Positions 52,583-58,809 of a DNA stretch of 64,000 nucleotides are shown in pieces. The position numbers and the translations under genes are program-made. How positions within the stretch are numbered: the stretch's first letter is position 1; each line of letters begins with the position of its first letter. The notes under the pieces are model-generated. The model was not told the origin of the DNA. It saw nothing but the letters and a program-made list of their open reading frames with translations, and searched no databases. The stretch covers positions 232,595 through 296,594 of IMG/VR virus record IMGVR_UViG_3300049460_000128, one strand, 5' to 3'.

Positions 52583-54316
52583 ATGAACGTGTTTTCGGAT
52601 AATCTGGCTGCACCATTCGATATGGCTGATGTGGTGGTCGCATACCTGAATCAACTGGAAGTTGAATACATCTTCGGAGTTCCAGGCGGTGCCATAGAAC
52701 CCCTCTACAATGCAATAGCTCGGCAAGAAAAACGCGGTGGCGTTCGCCACGTTCTCGCCCGCCACGAAACTGGGGCGGCATTCATGGCAGAAGGCTATGC
52801 GCGTGAAACTGGCAAACTGGGCGTCTGCTGTGCAACCTCCGGACCTGGTGTTACCAACATGATTACTGGTGTCGCCAATGCCAATGCCAACCGTGTGCCC
52901 GTGTTGGCAATCACCGGCCAACCATCCCTGAAGTCGTTCGGTCGTAACGCACTTCAAGAATCGTCCTGCACTGGCATCGATGTTGTAGCAATGATGAGTC
53001 ATTGCACGCAATACAGTACGTTGATATCGCACCCTGCTCAGATCGAAAACAAGTTCATCTCCGCAGTAAGTCATTCGTTGCGTGGGGCGCGTGGTGCGTC
53101 GCATCTGTCAGTGCCCAACGACATCTTCCGCATGCCGAGCGAACATGGTTCGCCACTCTACAAGCTGGAACGCGAACGTATGGTCAGTCACCACTACGCA
53201 CCCAGTGATGTGATTAATCTGTTCCACACCATCACCAACAGTCAGAATCCAGTCGTGTTGGTGGGCGCTCATGCGGGGCCAGCCATCCCCGAGATTATGA
53301 GTTTCGTCAAGGAGAACAATATTCCCTTCGTATCGACGCCTGACGGCAAAGGGTTTGTTGATATCAACAGTCCATTGTATTGCGGGGTGGTTGGCTTCAG
53401 CGGTCATCAATCGGCAATGGAAACCGTGAATGACCCAGCGGTAGACCTCCTGATTGCGATCGGGGCCACCATTGGTGAGTTGAATACCGGTGGCTGGTCA
53501 GCTGGTATCCTGAATGAGCACCTGGTCATCATCGACGAATGTGATCAAAATCTCATGCGGGCGCCAATGGCAAAGCTCCAGATGCATGGCAATACGTCAG
53601 CAATCATGCGTGGCTTGAATACCATGATCAACCTCATGCCCATGCGCTTCCGGGGCAATACGCATGGGCCCGTGACTATTACCGACTTCGTATGTTCGGT
53701 AAGCGACGATACACCAATCAAGCCCCAACGTTTGATGCGTGAGTTGAGCAGTATGTTCCCAAGCAACACTCGCTTTTTTGCCGATAATGGCAACAGCTTC
53801 TCGTGGGCCATCCATCATCTCAATCCAGGAATAATGACCTCCAATCATTTGAGCCGTGGCTGGTTGCATGTCACCACCGAGTTTGCTTCGATGGGTTGGG
53901 CAATCGGCACTTCAGTTGGGGCAGCAATGGCCAATCCAGAGTCCCCGGTCGTCTGCATTACTGGCGATGGTTCGATGCTGATGAGTGGTCAAGAGTTGTC
54001 CACTGCGGTAGCGGAACGCATCCCGATGATCTTCGTGGTGTTAAATGACAGCACCTTGGGGATGGTATATCATGGGCAGAAGATGGGCGGTGCTGAACCC
54101 ATAGCAACTGACATCCCGGTAACGAACTTTGCCGCGATCGCACAAGCAATGGGCGCGCAAAGCTTTGTGATTAACTCGGCCGTCGACCTGGAAGCTCTGA
54201 ATATCAAGGCGTTGTTGGCGCACAATGGCCCAACATTGCTGGATGTGCGGATCGACCGTGAAGAGGTTCCGCCCATGAAAAGCCGGGTGGCGGTATTGAC
54301 TGATACAGTTGAATAA
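52583..54316 (+). CDS. Thiamine-diphosphate-dependent enzyme, acetolactate-synthase-like superfamily
   Basis: IFGVPGG, catalytic ARHE, TSGPGVTN, ThDP motif GDGS-x23-ND, LLDVRID; RBS AGGAG. Confidence 0.93.
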   Translation: MNVFSDNLAAPFDMADVVVAYLNQLEVEYIFGVPGGAIEPLYNAIARQEKRGGVRHVLARHETGAAFMAEGYARETGKLGVCCATSGPGVTNMITGVANANANRVPVLAITGQPSLKSFGRNALQESSCTGIDVVAMMSHCTQYSTLISHPAQIENKFISAVSHSLRGARGASHLSVPNDIFRMPSEHGSPLYKLERERMVSHHYAPSDVINLFHTITNSQNPVVLVGAHAGPAIPEIMSFVKENNIPFVSTPDGKGFVDINSPLYCGVVGFSGHQSAMETVNDPAVDLLIAIGATIGELNTGGWSAGILNEHLVIIDECDQNLMRAPMAKLQMHGNTSAIMRGLNTMINLMPMRFRGNTHGPVTITDFVCSVSDDTPIKPQRLMRELSSMFPSNTRFFADNGNSFSWAIHHLNPGIMTSNHLSRGWLHVTTEFASMGWAIGTSVGAAMANPESPVVCITGDGSMLMSGQELSTAVAERIPMIFVVLNDSTLGMVYHGQKMGGAEPIATDIPVTNFAAIAQAMGAQSFVINSAVDLEALNIKALLAHNGPTLLDVRIDREEVPPMKSRVAVLTDTVE

Positions 54317-54321
54317 TTAGC

Positions 54322-54349
54322 AAAAAGGCCGCAGATTGCGGCCTTTTTT
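54322..54349. terminator. Bidirectional terminator between convergent genes
   Basis: A5-GGCCGCA-gat-TGCGGCC-T6; overlaps the PAS gene stop. Confidence 0.88.
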
Positions 54350-55277
54350 ATGAATTGATTTTCGTTAAATCTTTCAACGTCAACAAGCTAGATCGTCGAC
54401 CATCCCAAAGAATCATGGTACTCGACACCAACACGTCAACGCATTCGCCATCGGCTTTGGTGACCTTTACCAAATAGTTATGAGGTGATTCGTCACCTTG
54501 GATACGGCGATTGTGGCTGGCGGTTACCAATTCCTGATACTCGGCGGTAATGAAATTCCTCACCGGCTTGGCAATCATTTCTTCTTCCAGATACCCCAGG
54601 ATACAAGTCATTGCGGGATTGACTGCCACAACATGATGGTTGTCTACAACCATGATGCCATCAAAGCTTTGTTCGAAGATGCCACGATACCGTGACTCCT
54701 GCTCCAAGAGTAATTGCTGGACGGCCATGATCTTGGAGACGTCTTTGATCAAGAACAGAATCAAAGTTGAACCATCTTGGCGTTCAAATTGCGATACATT
54801 ACCATCAACCCAGATAGTATTGCCGTTCTTCAGTTTACCACGAATGAGTTCAATGTGATCATCATATAGCTCTGAACCATCTAAAGGTGATTGCGCGGTA
54901 AGGATGAACAGAATATCGTCCATGGAAAGCTTGCTGCCGTCTTCTCGAACAAACAGGTTACTGATACATTGGCCGATGATTTGAGATGCACTCCAGCCAA
55001 AGATAATCTCAGCAGCACGATTGAATGTAATGATGGTGCCGTCTGGTTTGCATACAATCAGGGCATCGTGCAGAAGCTTGGATGTGACTTCGATTTGTCG
55101 TATGCCGTCATCCAAGCGTCGTTTGAGTAAAGTAGTAACATCGTGCGCTGCATCAGCGGTCGACGTGGCAGCAGCCAATAAAGCTTGTTGGCTGTCACGT
55201 ACTTTAGCCATCATAGCTTCTTCGATTGTATTGTCTTCGACGGGCTTGGCCATCAAACTTTTGAACCAATTGAACAT
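54348..55277 (-). CDS. Tandem PAS-domain protein without output domain
   Basis: DALIVCKPDGTIITFNRAAEIIFGWSASQIIG and YRGIFEQSFDGIMVV...VNPAMTCILGY PAS signatures; N-terminal coiled coil; ends right after PAS2. Confidence 0.88.
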   Translation of the reverse strand: MFNWFKSLMAKPVEDNTIEEAMMAKVRDSQQALLAAATSTADAAHDVTTLLKRRLDDGIRQIEVTSKLLHDALIVCKPDGTIITFNRAAEIIFGWSASQIIGQCISNLFVREDGSKLSMDDILFILTAQSPLDGSELYDDHIELIRGKLKNGNTIWVDGNVSQFERQDGSTLILFLIKDVSKIMAVQQLLLEQESRYRGIFEQSFDGIMVVDNHHVVAVNPAMTCILGYLEEEMIAKPVRNFITAEYQELVTASHNRRIQGDESPHNYLVKVTKADGECVDVLVSSTMILWDGRRSSLLTLKDLTKINS

Positions 55278-55292
55278 AGTATCCCCAATGAG

Positions 55293-55538
55293 TTAAAGTT
55301 TGGCTTTGATTTCGTAGAGAACGATTTTCAGGCTGGTCAGTGCATCACTGAGGGACAGGTTGCCCTTGTAGTAATCGTCAATGATTTTTTCTATCTTGGC
55401 ATCCTTCTTAGTAACTTCACCAAGCAGGCGGCGACGTTCGTAGTATAGGAAGACGATGCCAATAACAAGAATTGCGATGATGGCAGAAGGTCCACCTTCG
55501 AACAATGCAGCGACTAATTTTTCCGTTATAGCATCCAT
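55293..55538 (-). CDS. Small single-TM protein (holin candidate)
   Basis: 81 aa; TM SAIIAILVIGIVFLYY then ERRRL; RBS GGAG; late promoter. Confidence 0.75.
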   Translation of the reverse strand: MDAITEKLVAALFEGGPSAIIAILVIGIVFLYYERRRLLGEVTKKDAKIEKIIDDYYKGNLSLSDALTSLKIVLYEIKAKL

Positions 55539-55541
55539 GGA

Positions 55542-55578
55542 TGATTCTCCGTATTTTCATTTATTTATTGGAGAATCA
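55542..55578 (-). promoter_or_regulatory. Late promoter in the loop of an RBS-sequestering hairpin
   Basis: Minus strand reads TGATTCTCC-a-ATAAATA-aatgaaaatac-GGAGAATCA-tcc-ATG. Confidence 0.75.
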
Positions 55579-55617
55579 CGAATGTTTAACCGTTGTTTTA
55601 ATCCAGGACCATAATGA

Positions 55618-55653
55618 GAAAAGCCCGGCTCTTGGGGCAGAGCCGGGCTTTTC
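55618..55653. terminator. Intrinsic terminator (15-bp inverted repeat)
   Basis: GAAAAGCCCGGCTCT / AGAGCCGGGCTTTTC. Confidence 0.85.
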
Positions 55654-55669: not shown

Positions 55670-55963
55670 TTACATGAAACGCAATTTGAACAGAATTGCA
55701 TCCGAGTCATTGATGAACTCGAATGCGAGACCATGATAGTAAACCGATTCTGGCTTTACATCATACACCGTTGCCATGGTGAATTGAACAATCTGGTTTT
55801 CATGCAACCAGTTCTTCAAGATCTCTACGTTGTCTTCCTTACTTTTCGGAAGCAAGCAGGTCAGTCGCTTACCACGAAACTGACTTGCAGTGCGACGCAC
55901 TTGATCGACATTAATGCGGGTGCTCAAGGCTTGACGCCAGGTACAAGCTAATTTCATTTTCAT
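55670..55963 (-). CDS. FxDExDA-family small protein
   Basis: FEFINDSDAILFKLRFM; RBS AAGAAGGA. Confidence 0.8.
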   Translation of the reverse strand: MKMKLACTWRQALSTRINVDQVRRTASQFRGKRLTCLLPKSKEDNVEILKNWLHENQIVQFTMATVYDVKPESVYYHGLAFEFINDSDAILFKLRFM

Positions 55964-56183: not shown

Positions 56184-56900
56184 TCAGGCGCCGCGTGATT
56201 TTATCAGGAGCAGCATGTTGTTTTCATCACGATATGCGGTCATATATTCACCCATACAATCAACTTGCCAAGATTCACCTAAGATATTCTTAATATTCTT
56301 ATAACTGTCTCCCAGGTACTTTTTAAAGTTGATTGGGGCCTCATTGAGTTTATTACGTGAAACAACAGTTTCCATGATTCCGTAGTCTTGAATCTCGAAA
56401 TCCAACGCACCGCACAAGCCGTTCATTTCAATGTAGTTTTCATACACATTGACCTTTGTCGTCGTATCATCTGGAAGCCAACTCTCAACCAGCTCCTTAA
56501 CCTTTTCAGCAAGCTCGAACTGAATATCGTCCAGAGCGACCAAGTGAGTGTCATCCAGACCTCGGATGCTGAACTCCCAATTTTCAATTGAAGTGAGGCT
56601 GGACAGCTCGCGGCACATCGCCGCAATATTTTCAGCTGTCTTATTGTTCATCCGCATCTCGACGAATACCATATAGTATCCGGTCTGGTCCGGGGCAGCA
56701 CTGACCTCAGTGTCAAGTAGATCCACGTGACTCTTTTGCAGGAAACGATTTACATCGTTTGCAACATCCTTACTATTGGCATAAAAGCCAATAACGATCG
56801 CAGCATCATCGATTTTACTTTCGTATTCGTCGATACTCACACGATTGTTCATCATGTGGACCAAGTCGTCTTTTCTCAAGCCTTCGTTTAACTTATTCAT
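56184..56900 (-). CDS. Conserved jumbo-phage hypothetical protein
   Basis: Start reassigned to MNKLNEGLRKDDL (8-nt overlap with the upstream gene); VSIDEYESKID. Confidence 0.75.
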   Translation of the reverse strand: MNKLNEGLRKDDLVHMMNNRVSIDEYESKIDDAAIVIGFYANSKDVANDVNRFLQKSHVDLLDTEVSAAPDQTGYYMVFVEMRMNNKTAENIAAMCRELSSLTSIENWEFSIRGLDDTHLVALDDIQFELAEKVKELVESWLPDDTTTKVNVYENYIEMNGLCGALDFEIQDYGIMETVVSRNKLNEAPINFKKYLGDSYKNIKNILGESWQVDCMGEYMTAYRDENNMLLLIKSRGA

Positions 56901-57333
56901 CGGTATACCCCGTATCATTATCGATGCCCATATCCTTTGCACCTTCCAAGTCGTCTTGGTCAACCTCGTCGTCGTAATAGTCACTGGCAGTGTTATTAAC
57001 GCCTGACAGTAGTCTGCGTGGTACTTCTAATTTGACAAGCCAAATCGGCTCTGCTGGCTTATTGGCCATAGCTTCCAGTTCACCCTTCTCAAATGACACC
57101 AGGATACCATGCTTCAACAGACGAAGTCCGGCTCGTGGGTCGGGCATTTGCTTGTGGGCATATTGAAGTGTGATAGACACCCAATATCGTTTAATGCGTG
57201 GACCGTCGATCAGTTCACCGTTGATCCAGTTCTGGAACACGTAAATGTCAAGCGAGTCCAATAGATCCTCACACTCCAGAAGAATGTCGAGAACGTGGGG
57301 AGTGTCTTCAATTGTTTCGAGATCAAGAGCCAT
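56893..57333 (-). CDS. Conserved jumbo-phage hypothetical protein
   Basis: LDIYVFQNWINGELIDGPRIKRYWV; late promoter at 57354-60. Confidence 0.8.
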   Translation of the reverse strand: MALDLETIEDTPHVLDILLECEDLLDSLDIYVFQNWINGELIDGPRIKRYWVSITLQYAHKQMPDPRAGLRLLKHGILVSFEKGELEAMANKPAEPIWLVKLEVPRRLLSGVNNTASDYYDDEVDQDDLEGAKDMGIDNDTGYTDE

Positions 57334-58277: not shown

Positions 58278-58748
58278 TTAGTTTTTAGTTTTCACTGCCT
58301 GGCCCGCGCCATCTTTTCGCTCCGATTTGGTGAGATTGTCGAGTTCATCATTGATCATGGTATCAAGCCGTACATTAATCAGACGAAGTACCTTGTTGCC
58401 AATTTCCGCTGCTGCTGGAGATTCGGCAATTGCTTGGGTCACGTAGCCAGCTGCCATCATATAGGCTGTACGTTGAGAAGGGATTAGGATCGCACAGGCA
58501 GCCGCGATAACTGCATATGACACAAAGCGTTTGACAAAGCCCATAAACCGAGTGGCGGCGTGAAAAACTAACATTTCACCCGAGCCATCTGATTTGTTAC
58601 TCTTACTCACGGTTGCATTCGGCCCCGCATCAACCCATGCCATGAAATATACCACAGCCAATACCAGGAAGGCCACACCTGTAATGATGGCGGCAACCTT
58701 GATAGAGTCGAGGAATTGAATCAGGTAGATAATAAATGCAAGTGTCAT
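58278..58748 (-). CDS. Membrane protein
   Basis: RBS AAAGGA; ILIPSQRTAYMMAAGY; late promoter at 58768-74. Confidence 0.75.
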   Translation of the reverse strand: MTLAFIIYLIQFLDSIKVAAIITGVAFLVLAVVYFMAWVDAGPNATVSKSNKSDGSGEMLVFHAATRFMGFVKRFVSYAVIAAACAILIPSQRTAYMMAAGYVTQAIAESPAAAEIGNKVLRLINVRLDTMINDELDNLTKSERKDGAGQAVKTKN

Positions 58749-58809
58749 TTGTGTTCCTTTATAAGAGTATTTATTAATCGGCAAGGTTCATCATTCCTTG
58801 CCGATTCTG

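What the first reader, a model, noticed from the sequence alone, without database searches (positions are those of the whole stretch)
54348..55277. Output-less tandem PAS protein in a late operon
Seen: N-terminal coiled coil, PAS1, PAS2, then stop, with no kinase, GGDEF or HTH domain. Known: stand-alone PAS proteins act by protein-protein interaction. Inference: a ligand- or redox-gated antiholin/partner of the upstream TM protein, or a dominant-negative decoy that heterodimerises with host PAS kinases or diguanylate cyclases.
Basis: partly seen in the sequence, partly recalled or inferred. Interest (0 to 1): 0.65.

Follow-up and report, generated by a model that had tools for sequence, protein, structure and literature searches.

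The report
Phage membrane-stub plus output-less PAS sensor pair
A huge rhizosphere phage carries a conserved two-gene unit, a tiny membrane protein followed by a sensor protein made only of PAS domains with an unusually conserved N-terminal helix. The unit is found only in Atu_ph07-like huge phages, its function is untested, and it could be studied in two cultured phages.

Summary
ORF 54348..55277(-) encodes 309 aa: a long N-terminal helix (res 16-70), PAS1 (72-179), a linker helix and PAS2 (207-303). The stop codon runs straight into a strong terminator, and there is no kinase, GGDEF, EAL or HTH domain. It is not a broken kinase. All relatives found (279-536 aa, 2-4 PAS domains) lack an output domain, and dN/dS against the closest fetched relative is 0.07. 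The family occurs only in huge phages (220-549 kb contigs, Agrobacterium phage Atu_ph07, Sinorhizobium phage Phosso). None was found in 185,579 prokaryote species genomes.

The most conserved part is the N-terminal helix (73% mean identity against 46% for the PAS domains), and this helix is specific to the family. The gene follows an 81-aa single-pass membrane protein in 15 of 16 distinct phage loci with full flanks, even where the neighbourhood differs. An invariant T4-late-type ATAAATA motif sits upstream of the pair, and the genome encodes a gp55-like sigma factor.

Best reading: a late-expressed, membrane-tethered cytoplasmic PAS sensor whose output is protein-protein contact through the N-helix and the membrane partner. 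The ligand and physiological role are unknown, and lysis timing is only a guess. The host-decoy idea is disfavoured. Binding of the two proteins is inferred, not shown.

The parts
55562..55568 (-). ATAAATA motif, T4-late-promoter-like, 24 nt upstream of the 81-aa gene
   Evidence: Invariant in an alignment of 7 loci and present 27-48 nt upstream of the homologous gene in Phosso, Atu_ph07, L047 and L049. In the phage's own genome 30 of 51 copies lie within 60 nt upstream of an ORF start, including tail sheath, portal and tail fibre genes, and it ranks first among same-composition heptamers. A gp55-like late sigma factor is encoded at G000:C1:126857-127723.
55293..55538 (-). 81-aa single-pass membrane protein ('TM81'): hydrophobic stretch about res 8-33 with a GG kink, then a basic cytoplasmic helix-turn-helix tail (res 34-81) holding the DDYYKGN motif
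   Evidence: ORF. Kyte-Doolittle maximum is 2.16; flanking net charge is -2 on the N side and +2 on the C side. The AF2 model has helices 2-14, 17-58 and 63-80. 29 homologues were found, all on huge-phage contigs, with a near-invariant tail. dN/dS is 0.024. No Pfam, PHROG, NCBIfam or PADLOC match.
54348..55277 (-). Output-less PAS protein, 309 aa
55068..55232 (-). N-terminal long helix (res 16-70); res 25-70 are the family signature and the most conserved segment
   Evidence: AF2 helix 16-70. Mean pairwise identity is 73% against 46-47% for the PAS domains. 21 invariant residues lie in a heptad pattern. An HMM of the helix hits every family member at 27-110 bits but none of about 147 bacterial multi-PAS proteins (at most 10 bits).
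54741..55064 (-). PAS1 (res 72-179)
   Evidence: Pfam and AF2. The closest PDB sequences are the FixL and DosP heme-PAS domains (E 2e-9), but the FixL His200 column is variable and not His.
54666..54737 (-). Inter-PAS linker helix (res 181-204)
   Evidence: AF2; 58% mean identity.
54369..54659 (-). PAS2 (res 207-303)
   Evidence: Pfam stretch 196-306; AF2.
54322..54348 (-). Intrinsic terminator hairpin (12 bp, 6 GC) that includes the PAS stop codon; palindromic, so it also serves the convergent TPP-enzyme gene
55617..55650 (-). GC-rich hairpin plus T-run after the upstream 97-aa gene; it separates that gene from the TM81-PAS unit
   Evidence: Read directly from the sequence. The scan listed only its plus-strand mirror.

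Best explanation
The PAS gene is the second gene of a phage-specific two-gene cassette (TM81 then PAS) transcribed from its own late-type promoter. TM81 is a bitopic inner-membrane protein (N-out, C-in by the positive-inside rule) with a strongly conserved cytoplasmic helical tail. The PAS protein is cytoplasmic. Its two PAS domains (2-4 in relatives) form the variable sensing part. Its invariant N-terminal helix, continuous with the N-cap of PAS1, is the output: a coiled-coil or helix-bundle interface that most likely docks onto the TM81 tail, probably as a dimer. The pair would then work like a split, membrane-anchored cytoplasmic sensor of the ArcB or Aer type, but without any enzymatic transmitter. 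A ligand or redox change in the PAS domains would shift the helix and so alter what TM81 does in the membrane late in infection. Shown: the architecture, the absence of output domains across the family, purifying selection, restriction to phages, gene pairing, and the promoter motif with a matching sigma factor. Inferred: physical binding, late timing, topology and signal direction. Guessed (about 0.2): that the controlled event is lysis timing or another energy-dependent membrane step.
For: Architecture and lack of output domain. No output domain anywhere in the family (279-536 aa), including Atu_ph07 gp049, which is auto-annotated as a histidine kinase but has only PAS hits. The N-helix is the most conserved and family-specific element. 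Structural neighbours in PDB and ESM Atlas cover only res 55/65-309, not the helix. TM81 lies directly upstream in the window and L003-L009, L020, Phosso, Atu_ph07, L047, L049, L060 and L061, with one inserted gene in L062; the wider neighbourhood differs in Phosso, Atu_ph07, L047, L049, L060-L062. TM81 evolves more slowly than the PAS protein (58% against 27% identity to Phosso; dN/dS 0.024 against 0.069). Conserved ATAAATA motif, gp55-like sigma and flanking terminators. No family member in 185,579 species genomes.
Against: The only direct test of TM81-PAS binding gave no verdict. One huge-phage contig (L048, 549 kb) has TM81 followed by a GIY-YIG gene, with no PAS gene within 5 kb. TM81 can therefore exist without an adjacent PAS gene. 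No cofactor or ligand signature could be assigned. There is no RNA evidence for timing. The ATAAATA motif also precedes a few non-structural genes, namely RNR and a helicase. Gene adjacency alone is weak evidence of binding.
Confidence: 0.55

Rival explanations
1. Lysis-timing device. TM81 is the so far unidentified holin, or a holin regulator, of Atu_ph07-like huge phages. The PAS protein is a cytoplasmic antiholin gated by ligand or redox state that holds the TM81 tail until a metabolic signal arrives.
For: TM81 is small, has a single TM segment and a charged C-terminal tail, and appears to be driven by a late promoter. No T4-type holin was found in the 70% of the genome held. The Atu_ph07 paper states that its lysis mechanism is unknown and no holin was identified (PMC6102473). 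In the window's clade the pair sits next to rIIA/rIIB.
Against: No endolysin or spanin lies nearby. The rII adjacency is lost in Phosso, Atu_ph07, L047 and L049. TM81 matches no holin family. There is no experimental data.
Confidence: 0.15
2. Dominant-negative decoy. The free PAS protein heterodimerises with host PAS-containing kinases or diguanylate cyclases and blocks host signalling.
For: The PAS-PAS core resembles the sensor modules of DosP, FixL, NifL and many kinases and cyclases. PAS domains commonly dimerise (general knowledge).
Against: The best bacterial matches in 185,579 species genomes are only 23-30% identical generic PAS domains, so there is no sign of recent capture from a host. 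The PAS surfaces are the fastest-evolving parts while a phage-specific helix is invariant. The family is conserved across phages of different hosts and is tied to a phage-encoded partner gene. Late expression suits host takeover poorly.
Confidence: 0.1
3. The PAS protein works independently of TM81, for example as a soluble small-molecule binder or as an assembly or virion-associated factor, and the adjacency reflects only co-transcription.
For: The complex prediction gave no support. L048 shows TM81 without an adjacent PAS gene. The upstream neighbours match PHROGs called virion structural proteins.
Against: Adjacency, often with overlapping stop and start codons, holds over very deep divergence (22-27% PAS identity) and after relocation of the pair. 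In the Atu_ph07 record, proteins seen by virion mass spectrometry are named 'virion structural protein', and gp048/gp049 are not so named; this is weak evidence.
Confidence: 0.15
4. Decaying remnant of a sensor kinase.
For: A third, homologous PAS domain is present in several lineages (Phosso, L047, P0009-P0014) and was probably lost in the window's clade.
Against: No member has HisKA, HATPase_c, GGDEF, EAL or HTH domains. dN/dS is 0.07 overall, and dN is 0.01 in the N-helix. A terminator abuts the stop codon.
Confidence: 0.02

Closest known systems
Agrobacterium phage Atu_ph07 gp048/gp049 and Sinorhizobium phage Phosso XYS97610/XYS97609 (cultured relatives)
   Same: Same cassette: an 81-aa TM protein, then a protein with the N-helix signature followed only by PAS domains, preceded by ATAAATA.
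   Different: These have 4 and 3 PAS domains against 2 here, with only 22-27% identity in the PAS protein, and sit in a different neighbourhood with no rII genes next door. [quoted passage not shown] No function has been published.
Tandem PAS sensor modules of FixL, DosP, NifL and MmoS
   Same: These give the best fold and sequence matches to PAS1-linker-PAS2.
   Different: They carry kinase, GGDEF-EAL or GHKL transmitters and defined cofactors (heme, FAD). Here there is no transmitter, and the FixL heme-ligating His column is not conserved.
ArcB and Aer (membrane-anchored cytoplasmic PAS sensors; from general knowledge)
   Same: In both, a TM segment acts as an anchor, a helix connects to a cytoplasmic PAS domain, and the protein senses the redox or energy state of the membrane. 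This is the proposed working analogy. An ESM-feature lead to ArcB-TM+PAS clusters scored only 0.81.
   Different: ArcB and Aer are single polypeptides with a kinase or an MCP signalling domain. Here the anchor and sensor are separate genes and there is no transmitter. No homology is shown.
VqmA of vibriophage VP882 (PMC8284805)
   Same: A phage-encoded PAS-domain receptor that lets a phage read a chemical cue.
   Different: VqmA is PAS plus an HTH transcription factor from a temperate phage, copied from a host receptor. The present family has no DNA-binding domain, no host counterpart, and sits in lytic-type huge phages.
T4 RIII-holin T (cytoplasmic antiholin; from general knowledge)
   Same: A soluble cytoplasmic protein acting on the cytoplasmic part of a small single-TM phage membrane protein. 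This is the template for the lysis-timing reading.
   Different: There is no sequence or fold relation. T holin was not found here, and RIII has no sensor domain.
Short LOV proteins, PYP and other effector-less PAS proteins
   Same: PAS domains with only flanking helices that signal through protein contacts. Short-LOV entries appear among the weak PDB sequence hits.
   Different: Those are single-domain and bind flavin or chromophore through a conserved Cys. The LOV NCRFL motif is absent here.

Membership tests
PAS domain superfamily (Pfam PF00989/PF13426; TIGR00229) | Sequence match above curated thresholds, in two copies | tested here: met
   PAS_9 79.1 bits (cut-off 27), PAS 77.6 bits (cut-off 22.6), two stretches. 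TIGR00229 scores 120 bits (cut-off 22.9), two stretches.
PAS domain superfamily (Pfam PF00989/PF13426; TIGR00229) | PAS fold (antiparallel beta-sheet flanked by helices) | tested here: met
   AF2 model with pLDDT 88-94 in the domain cores. Foldseek probability is 1.00 to the PAS-PAS modules of DosP, FixL, LOV-PAS and NifL.
Two-component sensor histidine kinase | HisKA/DHp domain with a phospho-acceptor His, plus an HATPase_c domain | tested here: not met
   No such Pfam hit at E<=0.01 in the window protein, Phosso, L003 or Atu_ph07 gp049. Kinase equivalogs score 18-57 bits against cut-offs of 334-1000. His45 in the helix is not conserved.
GGDEF/EAL c-di-GMP enzymes (DosP-like) | GGDEF and/or EAL catalytic domain | tested here: not met
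   No hit. The DosP equivalog scores 33 bits against a cut-off of 857.
Heme-PAS (FixL/DosP type) | Proximal His in the F-alpha helix | tested here: not met
   In the profile alignment to FixL, the His200 column corresponds to a variable Met/Val/Ile/Cys/Pro position in PAS1. His255 of PAS2 is near-invariant in the close set but absent in Phosso, L047, L049 and Atu_ph07.
LOV domain | GXNCRFLQ motif with the adduct-forming Cys | tested here: not met
   The motif is absent. Cys104 is out of register and not conserved.
Phage holin or antiholin | Membrane lesion formation, or its inhibition, that controls lysis timing; usually linked to an endolysin gene | not testable with these tools
   TM81 has holin-like size and topology, but it matches no holin family, there is no endolysin nearby, and Phage_holin_T was not found.
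Anti-phage defence or counter-defence proteins (PADLOC) | Match to a known defence-system protein model | tested here: not met
   No hit for the PAS protein, TM81 or the 97-aa protein.
TM81 + N-helix-PAS cassette of Atu_ph07-like huge phages (defined here) | N-terminal helix signature (res 25-74), then 2-4 PAS domains and no other domain; gene preceded by a TM81 homologue and an ATAAATA motif | tested here: met
   Helix HMM scores 106.8 bits on the public call of this gene, P0001; gene pairing; upstream motif.

The most novel reading that the evidence does not exclude
TM81 is the missing holin, or another lethal membrane effector, of Atu_ph07-like huge phages. The output-less PAS protein is then a cytoplasmic, ligand- or redox-gated antiholin that docks on the TM81 tail through its invariant N-helix. 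These half-megabase phages would thereby couple the moment of lysis to the metabolic state of the host, a sensor-controlled lysis clock of a kind not described before.
Probability: 0.12. Interest if true: 0.8.

Novelty: new variant of a known kind. Interest (0 to 1): 0.45.

Why it matters
PAS domains are the commonest bacterial sensor modules, but almost nothing is known about lytic phages sensing their host's state. This is a sensor-only protein kept under strong selection in a whole clade of 0.2-0.55 Mb soil and rhizosphere phages. It is always tied to one small membrane protein, and an invariant helix is the only candidate output. If the pair is a sensing device acting late in infection, it would show that huge phages time a membrane event, possibly lysis, according to host physiology. 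It is directly testable because two cultured phages, Atu_ph07 on A. tumefaciens C58 and Phosso on S. meliloti, carry it. The work also corrects a misleading 'histidine kinase' annotation in a reference phage genome.

Tried and rejected
1. Complex prediction of PAS res 1-190 with TM81 scored 0.11 against a mark of 0.32, and the controls were not run. The result is 'no answer' and is not used for or against binding.
2. The exhaustive representative search with the family profile was run because the claim 'no output domain' rests on the absence of longer relatives. The list was swamped by giant multi-PAS bacterial proteins with summed repeat scores. Only four true family representatives appeared (309, 439, 310 and 318 aa), so it is uninformative about fusions. 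I partly compensated with a local helix-HMM search of those hits and with pattern scans of viral and genome collections.
3. The word search restricted to res 20-80 returned only the closest clade.
4. Heme (FixL His), LOV (Cys motif) and a universal His255 were all rejected on the alignments. The redox Cys76 is replaced by Thr, Ser or Val in some members.
5. I suspected the N-helix resembled MCP or HAMP methylation helices. Pfam gives no hit even at E<=10, and the ESM-feature search gave only unnamed clusters.
6. PADLOC gave no hit and T4 holin T was not found.
7. Expression could not be checked. No RNA run holds the locus; the only full holder is a rhizosphere metagenome that may be the source.
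8. Megablast of the region against the phage collection found no match.

Full report
**What is there**

The window is the last 64 kb of a 296,594-bp IMG/VR virus record, estimated to be 70% complete. By tail sheath similarity its nearest cultured relatives are Agrobacterium phage Atu_ph07 (490 kb, 50% identity) and Sinorhizobium phage Phosso (469 kb, 48%). The only sequencing run that holds the locus in full is a rhizosphere metagenome.

ORF 54348..55277(-) is open for 309 aa.
- Pfam finds two PAS domains well above threshold and nothing else.
- NCBIfam passes only the generic sensory_box model.
- The AlphaFold2 model (mean pLDDT 80) has one long helix (res 16-70), PAS1 (72-179), a linker helix (181-204) and PAS2 (207-303).
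- The stop codon is embedded in a 12-bp GC-rich terminator hairpin, 31 nt from the end of a convergent gene.

**Is it a truncated kinase?**

It is not. The word-index search found 26 relatives of two size classes, about 300-325 aa and 432-442 aa, all carrying only PAS families. The extra length in the larger class is a third PAS domain.

More distant members were reached through the partner gene and by fold search:
- Phosso (434 aa)
- Atu_ph07 gp049 (536 aa)
- L047 (379 aa)
- L049 (295 aa)
- L060 (421 aa)
- L061 (279 aa)
- L062 (413 aa)

For Phosso and Atu_ph07 a Pfam scan here found only PAS; for L047 and L049-L062 only PAS families are on record for the called genes. [quoted passage not shown] That is a RAST name that Pfam does not bear out.

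Against its closest fetched relative (L004, 85% identity) the gene has dN/dS 0.069. The tree has an unresolved backbone. The homologous third PAS domain occurs in at least three lineages, so it was probably ancestral and lost in the window's clade. That is a shortening of the sensor part, not the loss of a transmitter.

**Where the constraint lies**

The most conserved segment is not a PAS domain. It is the N-terminal helix.
- Residues 25-70 have 73% mean pairwise identity, against 46-47% for PAS1 and PAS2.
- Between the window and L004, dN in the helix is 0.010.
- It holds 21 invariant residues in a 3-4 heptad pattern. Small residues (Ala, Thr, Ser) fill the core positions of the first half and Leu/Ile those of the second. 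Several invariant polar residues fall outside a simple a/d stripe.
- An HMM of the helix scores 27-110 bits on every family member, including Atu_ph07. It scores at most 10 bits on about 147 bacterial multi-PAS proteins that were the best PAS matches among 1.8 billion representatives.
- Structural neighbours in PDB and the ESM Atlas align only from residue 55-65 onward.

The helix is thus a family-specific element and the only plausible output surface.

**The partner gene**

An 81-aa ORF (55293..55538, TM81) lies directly upstream, separated by 15 nt.
- It has one hydrophobic stretch (about res 8-33, with a GG kink). The N side is acidic and the C side basic, so the orientation is N-out, C-in by the positive-inside rule.
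- Its cytoplasmic tail is modelled as helix-turn-helix.
- It has 29 homologues, all on phage-sized contigs (up to 549 kb). The tail, which contains DDYYKGN, is nearly invariant.
- It matches no family in Pfam, PHROGs, NCBIfam or PADLOC.

The TM81 homologue lies directly before the PAS gene, often with overlapping stop and start codons, in the window, L003, L004/L005, L006, L007, L008, L009, L020, Phosso, Atu_ph07, L047, L049, L060 and L061. In L062 a 174-aa gene sits between them.

In the window's clade the pair sits between a PhoH/virion-protein block and convergent rIIB-rIIA genes. In Phosso, Atu_ph07, L047, L049 and L060-L062 the surroundings are different. So the pair moves and persists as a cassette.

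TM81 diverges more slowly than its neighbour: 58% against 27% identity to Phosso, and dN/dS 0.024.

There is one exception. On the 549-kb contig behind L048, TM81 is followed by a GIY-YIG endonuclease gene, and no PAS relative lies within 5 kb.

**Transcription**

After the upstream 97-aa gene there is a GC-rich hairpin with a T-run. An intergenic region follows whose only invariant block across seven loci is ATAAATA, 24 nt before the TM81 start. The same heptamer lies 27-48 nt upstream of the TM81 homologue in Phosso, Atu_ph07, L047 and L049.

In the phage's own genome:
- 30 of 51 copies lie within 60 nt upstream of an ORF start on the same strand. The rough expectation is about 2.
- It is the most upstream-enriched heptamer of its composition.
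- The genes it precedes include tail sheath, portal, a protease, tail-fibre-like proteins and virion proteins, and also an RNR and a helicase.

The motif is one base short of the T4 late promoter TATAAATA (general knowledge). The genome encodes a gp55-like late sigma factor (phrog_12791 E 9e-77, phrog_234 E 5e-19).

'Late' is therefore a well-founded inference. The unit is a bicistron of its own rather than part of a long late operon. No RNA data exist.

**Sensing**

PAS1 is closest in sequence to the heme-PAS domains of FixL and DosP (E 2e-9). The whole PAS-PAS core superposes best on DosP, PpsR, LOV-PAS-HK, FixL, MmoS and NifL. The heme-ligating His column is variable, the LOV Cys motif is absent, and His255 and Cys76 are not universal. 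No cofactor can be assigned. The PAS domains vary in number (2-4) and in sequence, as expected for the adaptive input part.

**Distribution**

A pattern scan of one genome for each of 185,579 prokaryote species found only generic PAS domains at 23-30% identity. None carries the helix signature as a relative. IMG/VR added two more huge contigs of 524 and 425 kb. Among 50,697 cultured-phage records only Phosso is detectable by tblastn; Atu_ph07 was found by fold search. Literature searches found no description of this family.

**Mechanism proposed**

I propose a split, membrane-tethered cytoplasmic PAS sensor made late in infection. TM81 is both anchor and effector. The PAS protein docks through its invariant N-helix, probably as a dimer in a helix bundle. 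A ligand or redox change in the PAS domains is passed along the helix, as it is through the N-cap and linker helices of other PAS sensors. Binding is inferred from co-conservation and gene coupling. The single complex prediction allowed returned no verdict and is not counted either way.

What TM81 does is unknown. Lysis timing is attractive for three reasons: TM81 has holin-like size and topology, no holin is known in Atu_ph07 (PMC6102473), and no T-type holin was found here. No lysis gene is linked, however, so I give this reading about 0.15-0.2.

The decoy hypothesis is disfavoured for three reasons: there is no host-like sequence, the PAS surfaces evolve fastest, and the partner appears to be phage-encoded.

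**Verdict**

- Observation: confirmed.
- Interpretation: partly supported.
- Novelty: a new variant of a known kind, namely an effector-less PAS sensor in a conserved, phage-specific two-gene cassette with a distinctive output helix.
- Interest: moderate (0.45). The domain itself is ordinary, but the cassette is undescribed, deeply conserved in huge phages, and testable in two cultured systems.

Noticed in passing
window 52583-54316 (+): A 577-aa thiamine-diphosphate enzyme of the acetolactate-synthase / pyruvate-oxidase type (all three TPP domains; phrog_11199 E 9e-96). NCBIfam ALS equivalogs score about 313 bits, below their cut-offs. It sits between the PAS gene and rIIB only in this phage. 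Relatives with an 85%-identical PAS gene (L004) have nothing there, and L003 has an unrelated 253-aa gene. It looks like a lineage-specific auxiliary metabolic gene.
   Followed up: partly
whole genome G000; sigma factor at G000:C1:126857-127723 (-): ATAAATA behaves as a genome-wide late-promoter element (30 of 51 copies within 60 nt upstream of starts), and a gp55-like late sigma factor is encoded. In Atu_ph07 and Phosso, divergent copies on both strands flank the TM81 upstream region.
   Followed up: partly
L059 5600-7210 (Atu_ph07 gp049, NC_042013.1 36599-38209): [quoted passage not shown] Pfam finds only PAS domains in the 536-aa protein.
   Followed up: yes
L048 5344-6126; L062 3335-3859: Mobile or inserted genes occur at the cassette junction. 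In L048 a GIY-YIG endonuclease gene follows TM81 and no PAS gene lies within 5 kb. In L062 a 174-aa gene of unknown function sits between TM83 and the PAS gene.
   Followed up: partly
window 55068-55200 (N-helix codons 25-70): Synonymous divergence between the window and L004 is much lower in the helix-coding segment (dS 0.36) than in the rest of the gene (dS about 2.0-2.25). This could reflect a nucleotide-level constraint, local recombination or small-sample noise.
   Followed up: no
L047 (GCA_043956695.1, contig JBINOA010003469.1, 1,136,180 bp): A TM83 + PAS (379 aa) cassette lies among phage-like genes (clamp loader, thymidine kinase, M16 peptidase) on a 1.1-Mb contig of an NCBI assembly. 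The contig may be a very large phage, an integrated element or a chimeric assembly.
   Followed up: no
window 55670-55963 (-): A conserved 97-aa protein with no family match lies upstream of the cassette throughout the window's clade (35-72% identity) and is separated from it by a hairpin. It is missing at this position in L008.
   Followed up: partly
window 58278-58784 (-) and 56893-57333 (-): ATAAATA motifs also precede the 168-aa membrane protein (phrog_3878; the motif implies a start at Met13) and the 146-aa 'virion structural' gene. This suggests several short late units in this block rather than one operon.
   Followed up: no
L049 599-1903: An IS605 OrfB/TnpB (Cas12f-like) gene lies about 3 kb upstream of the cassette on a 457-kb phage contig.
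   Followed up: no
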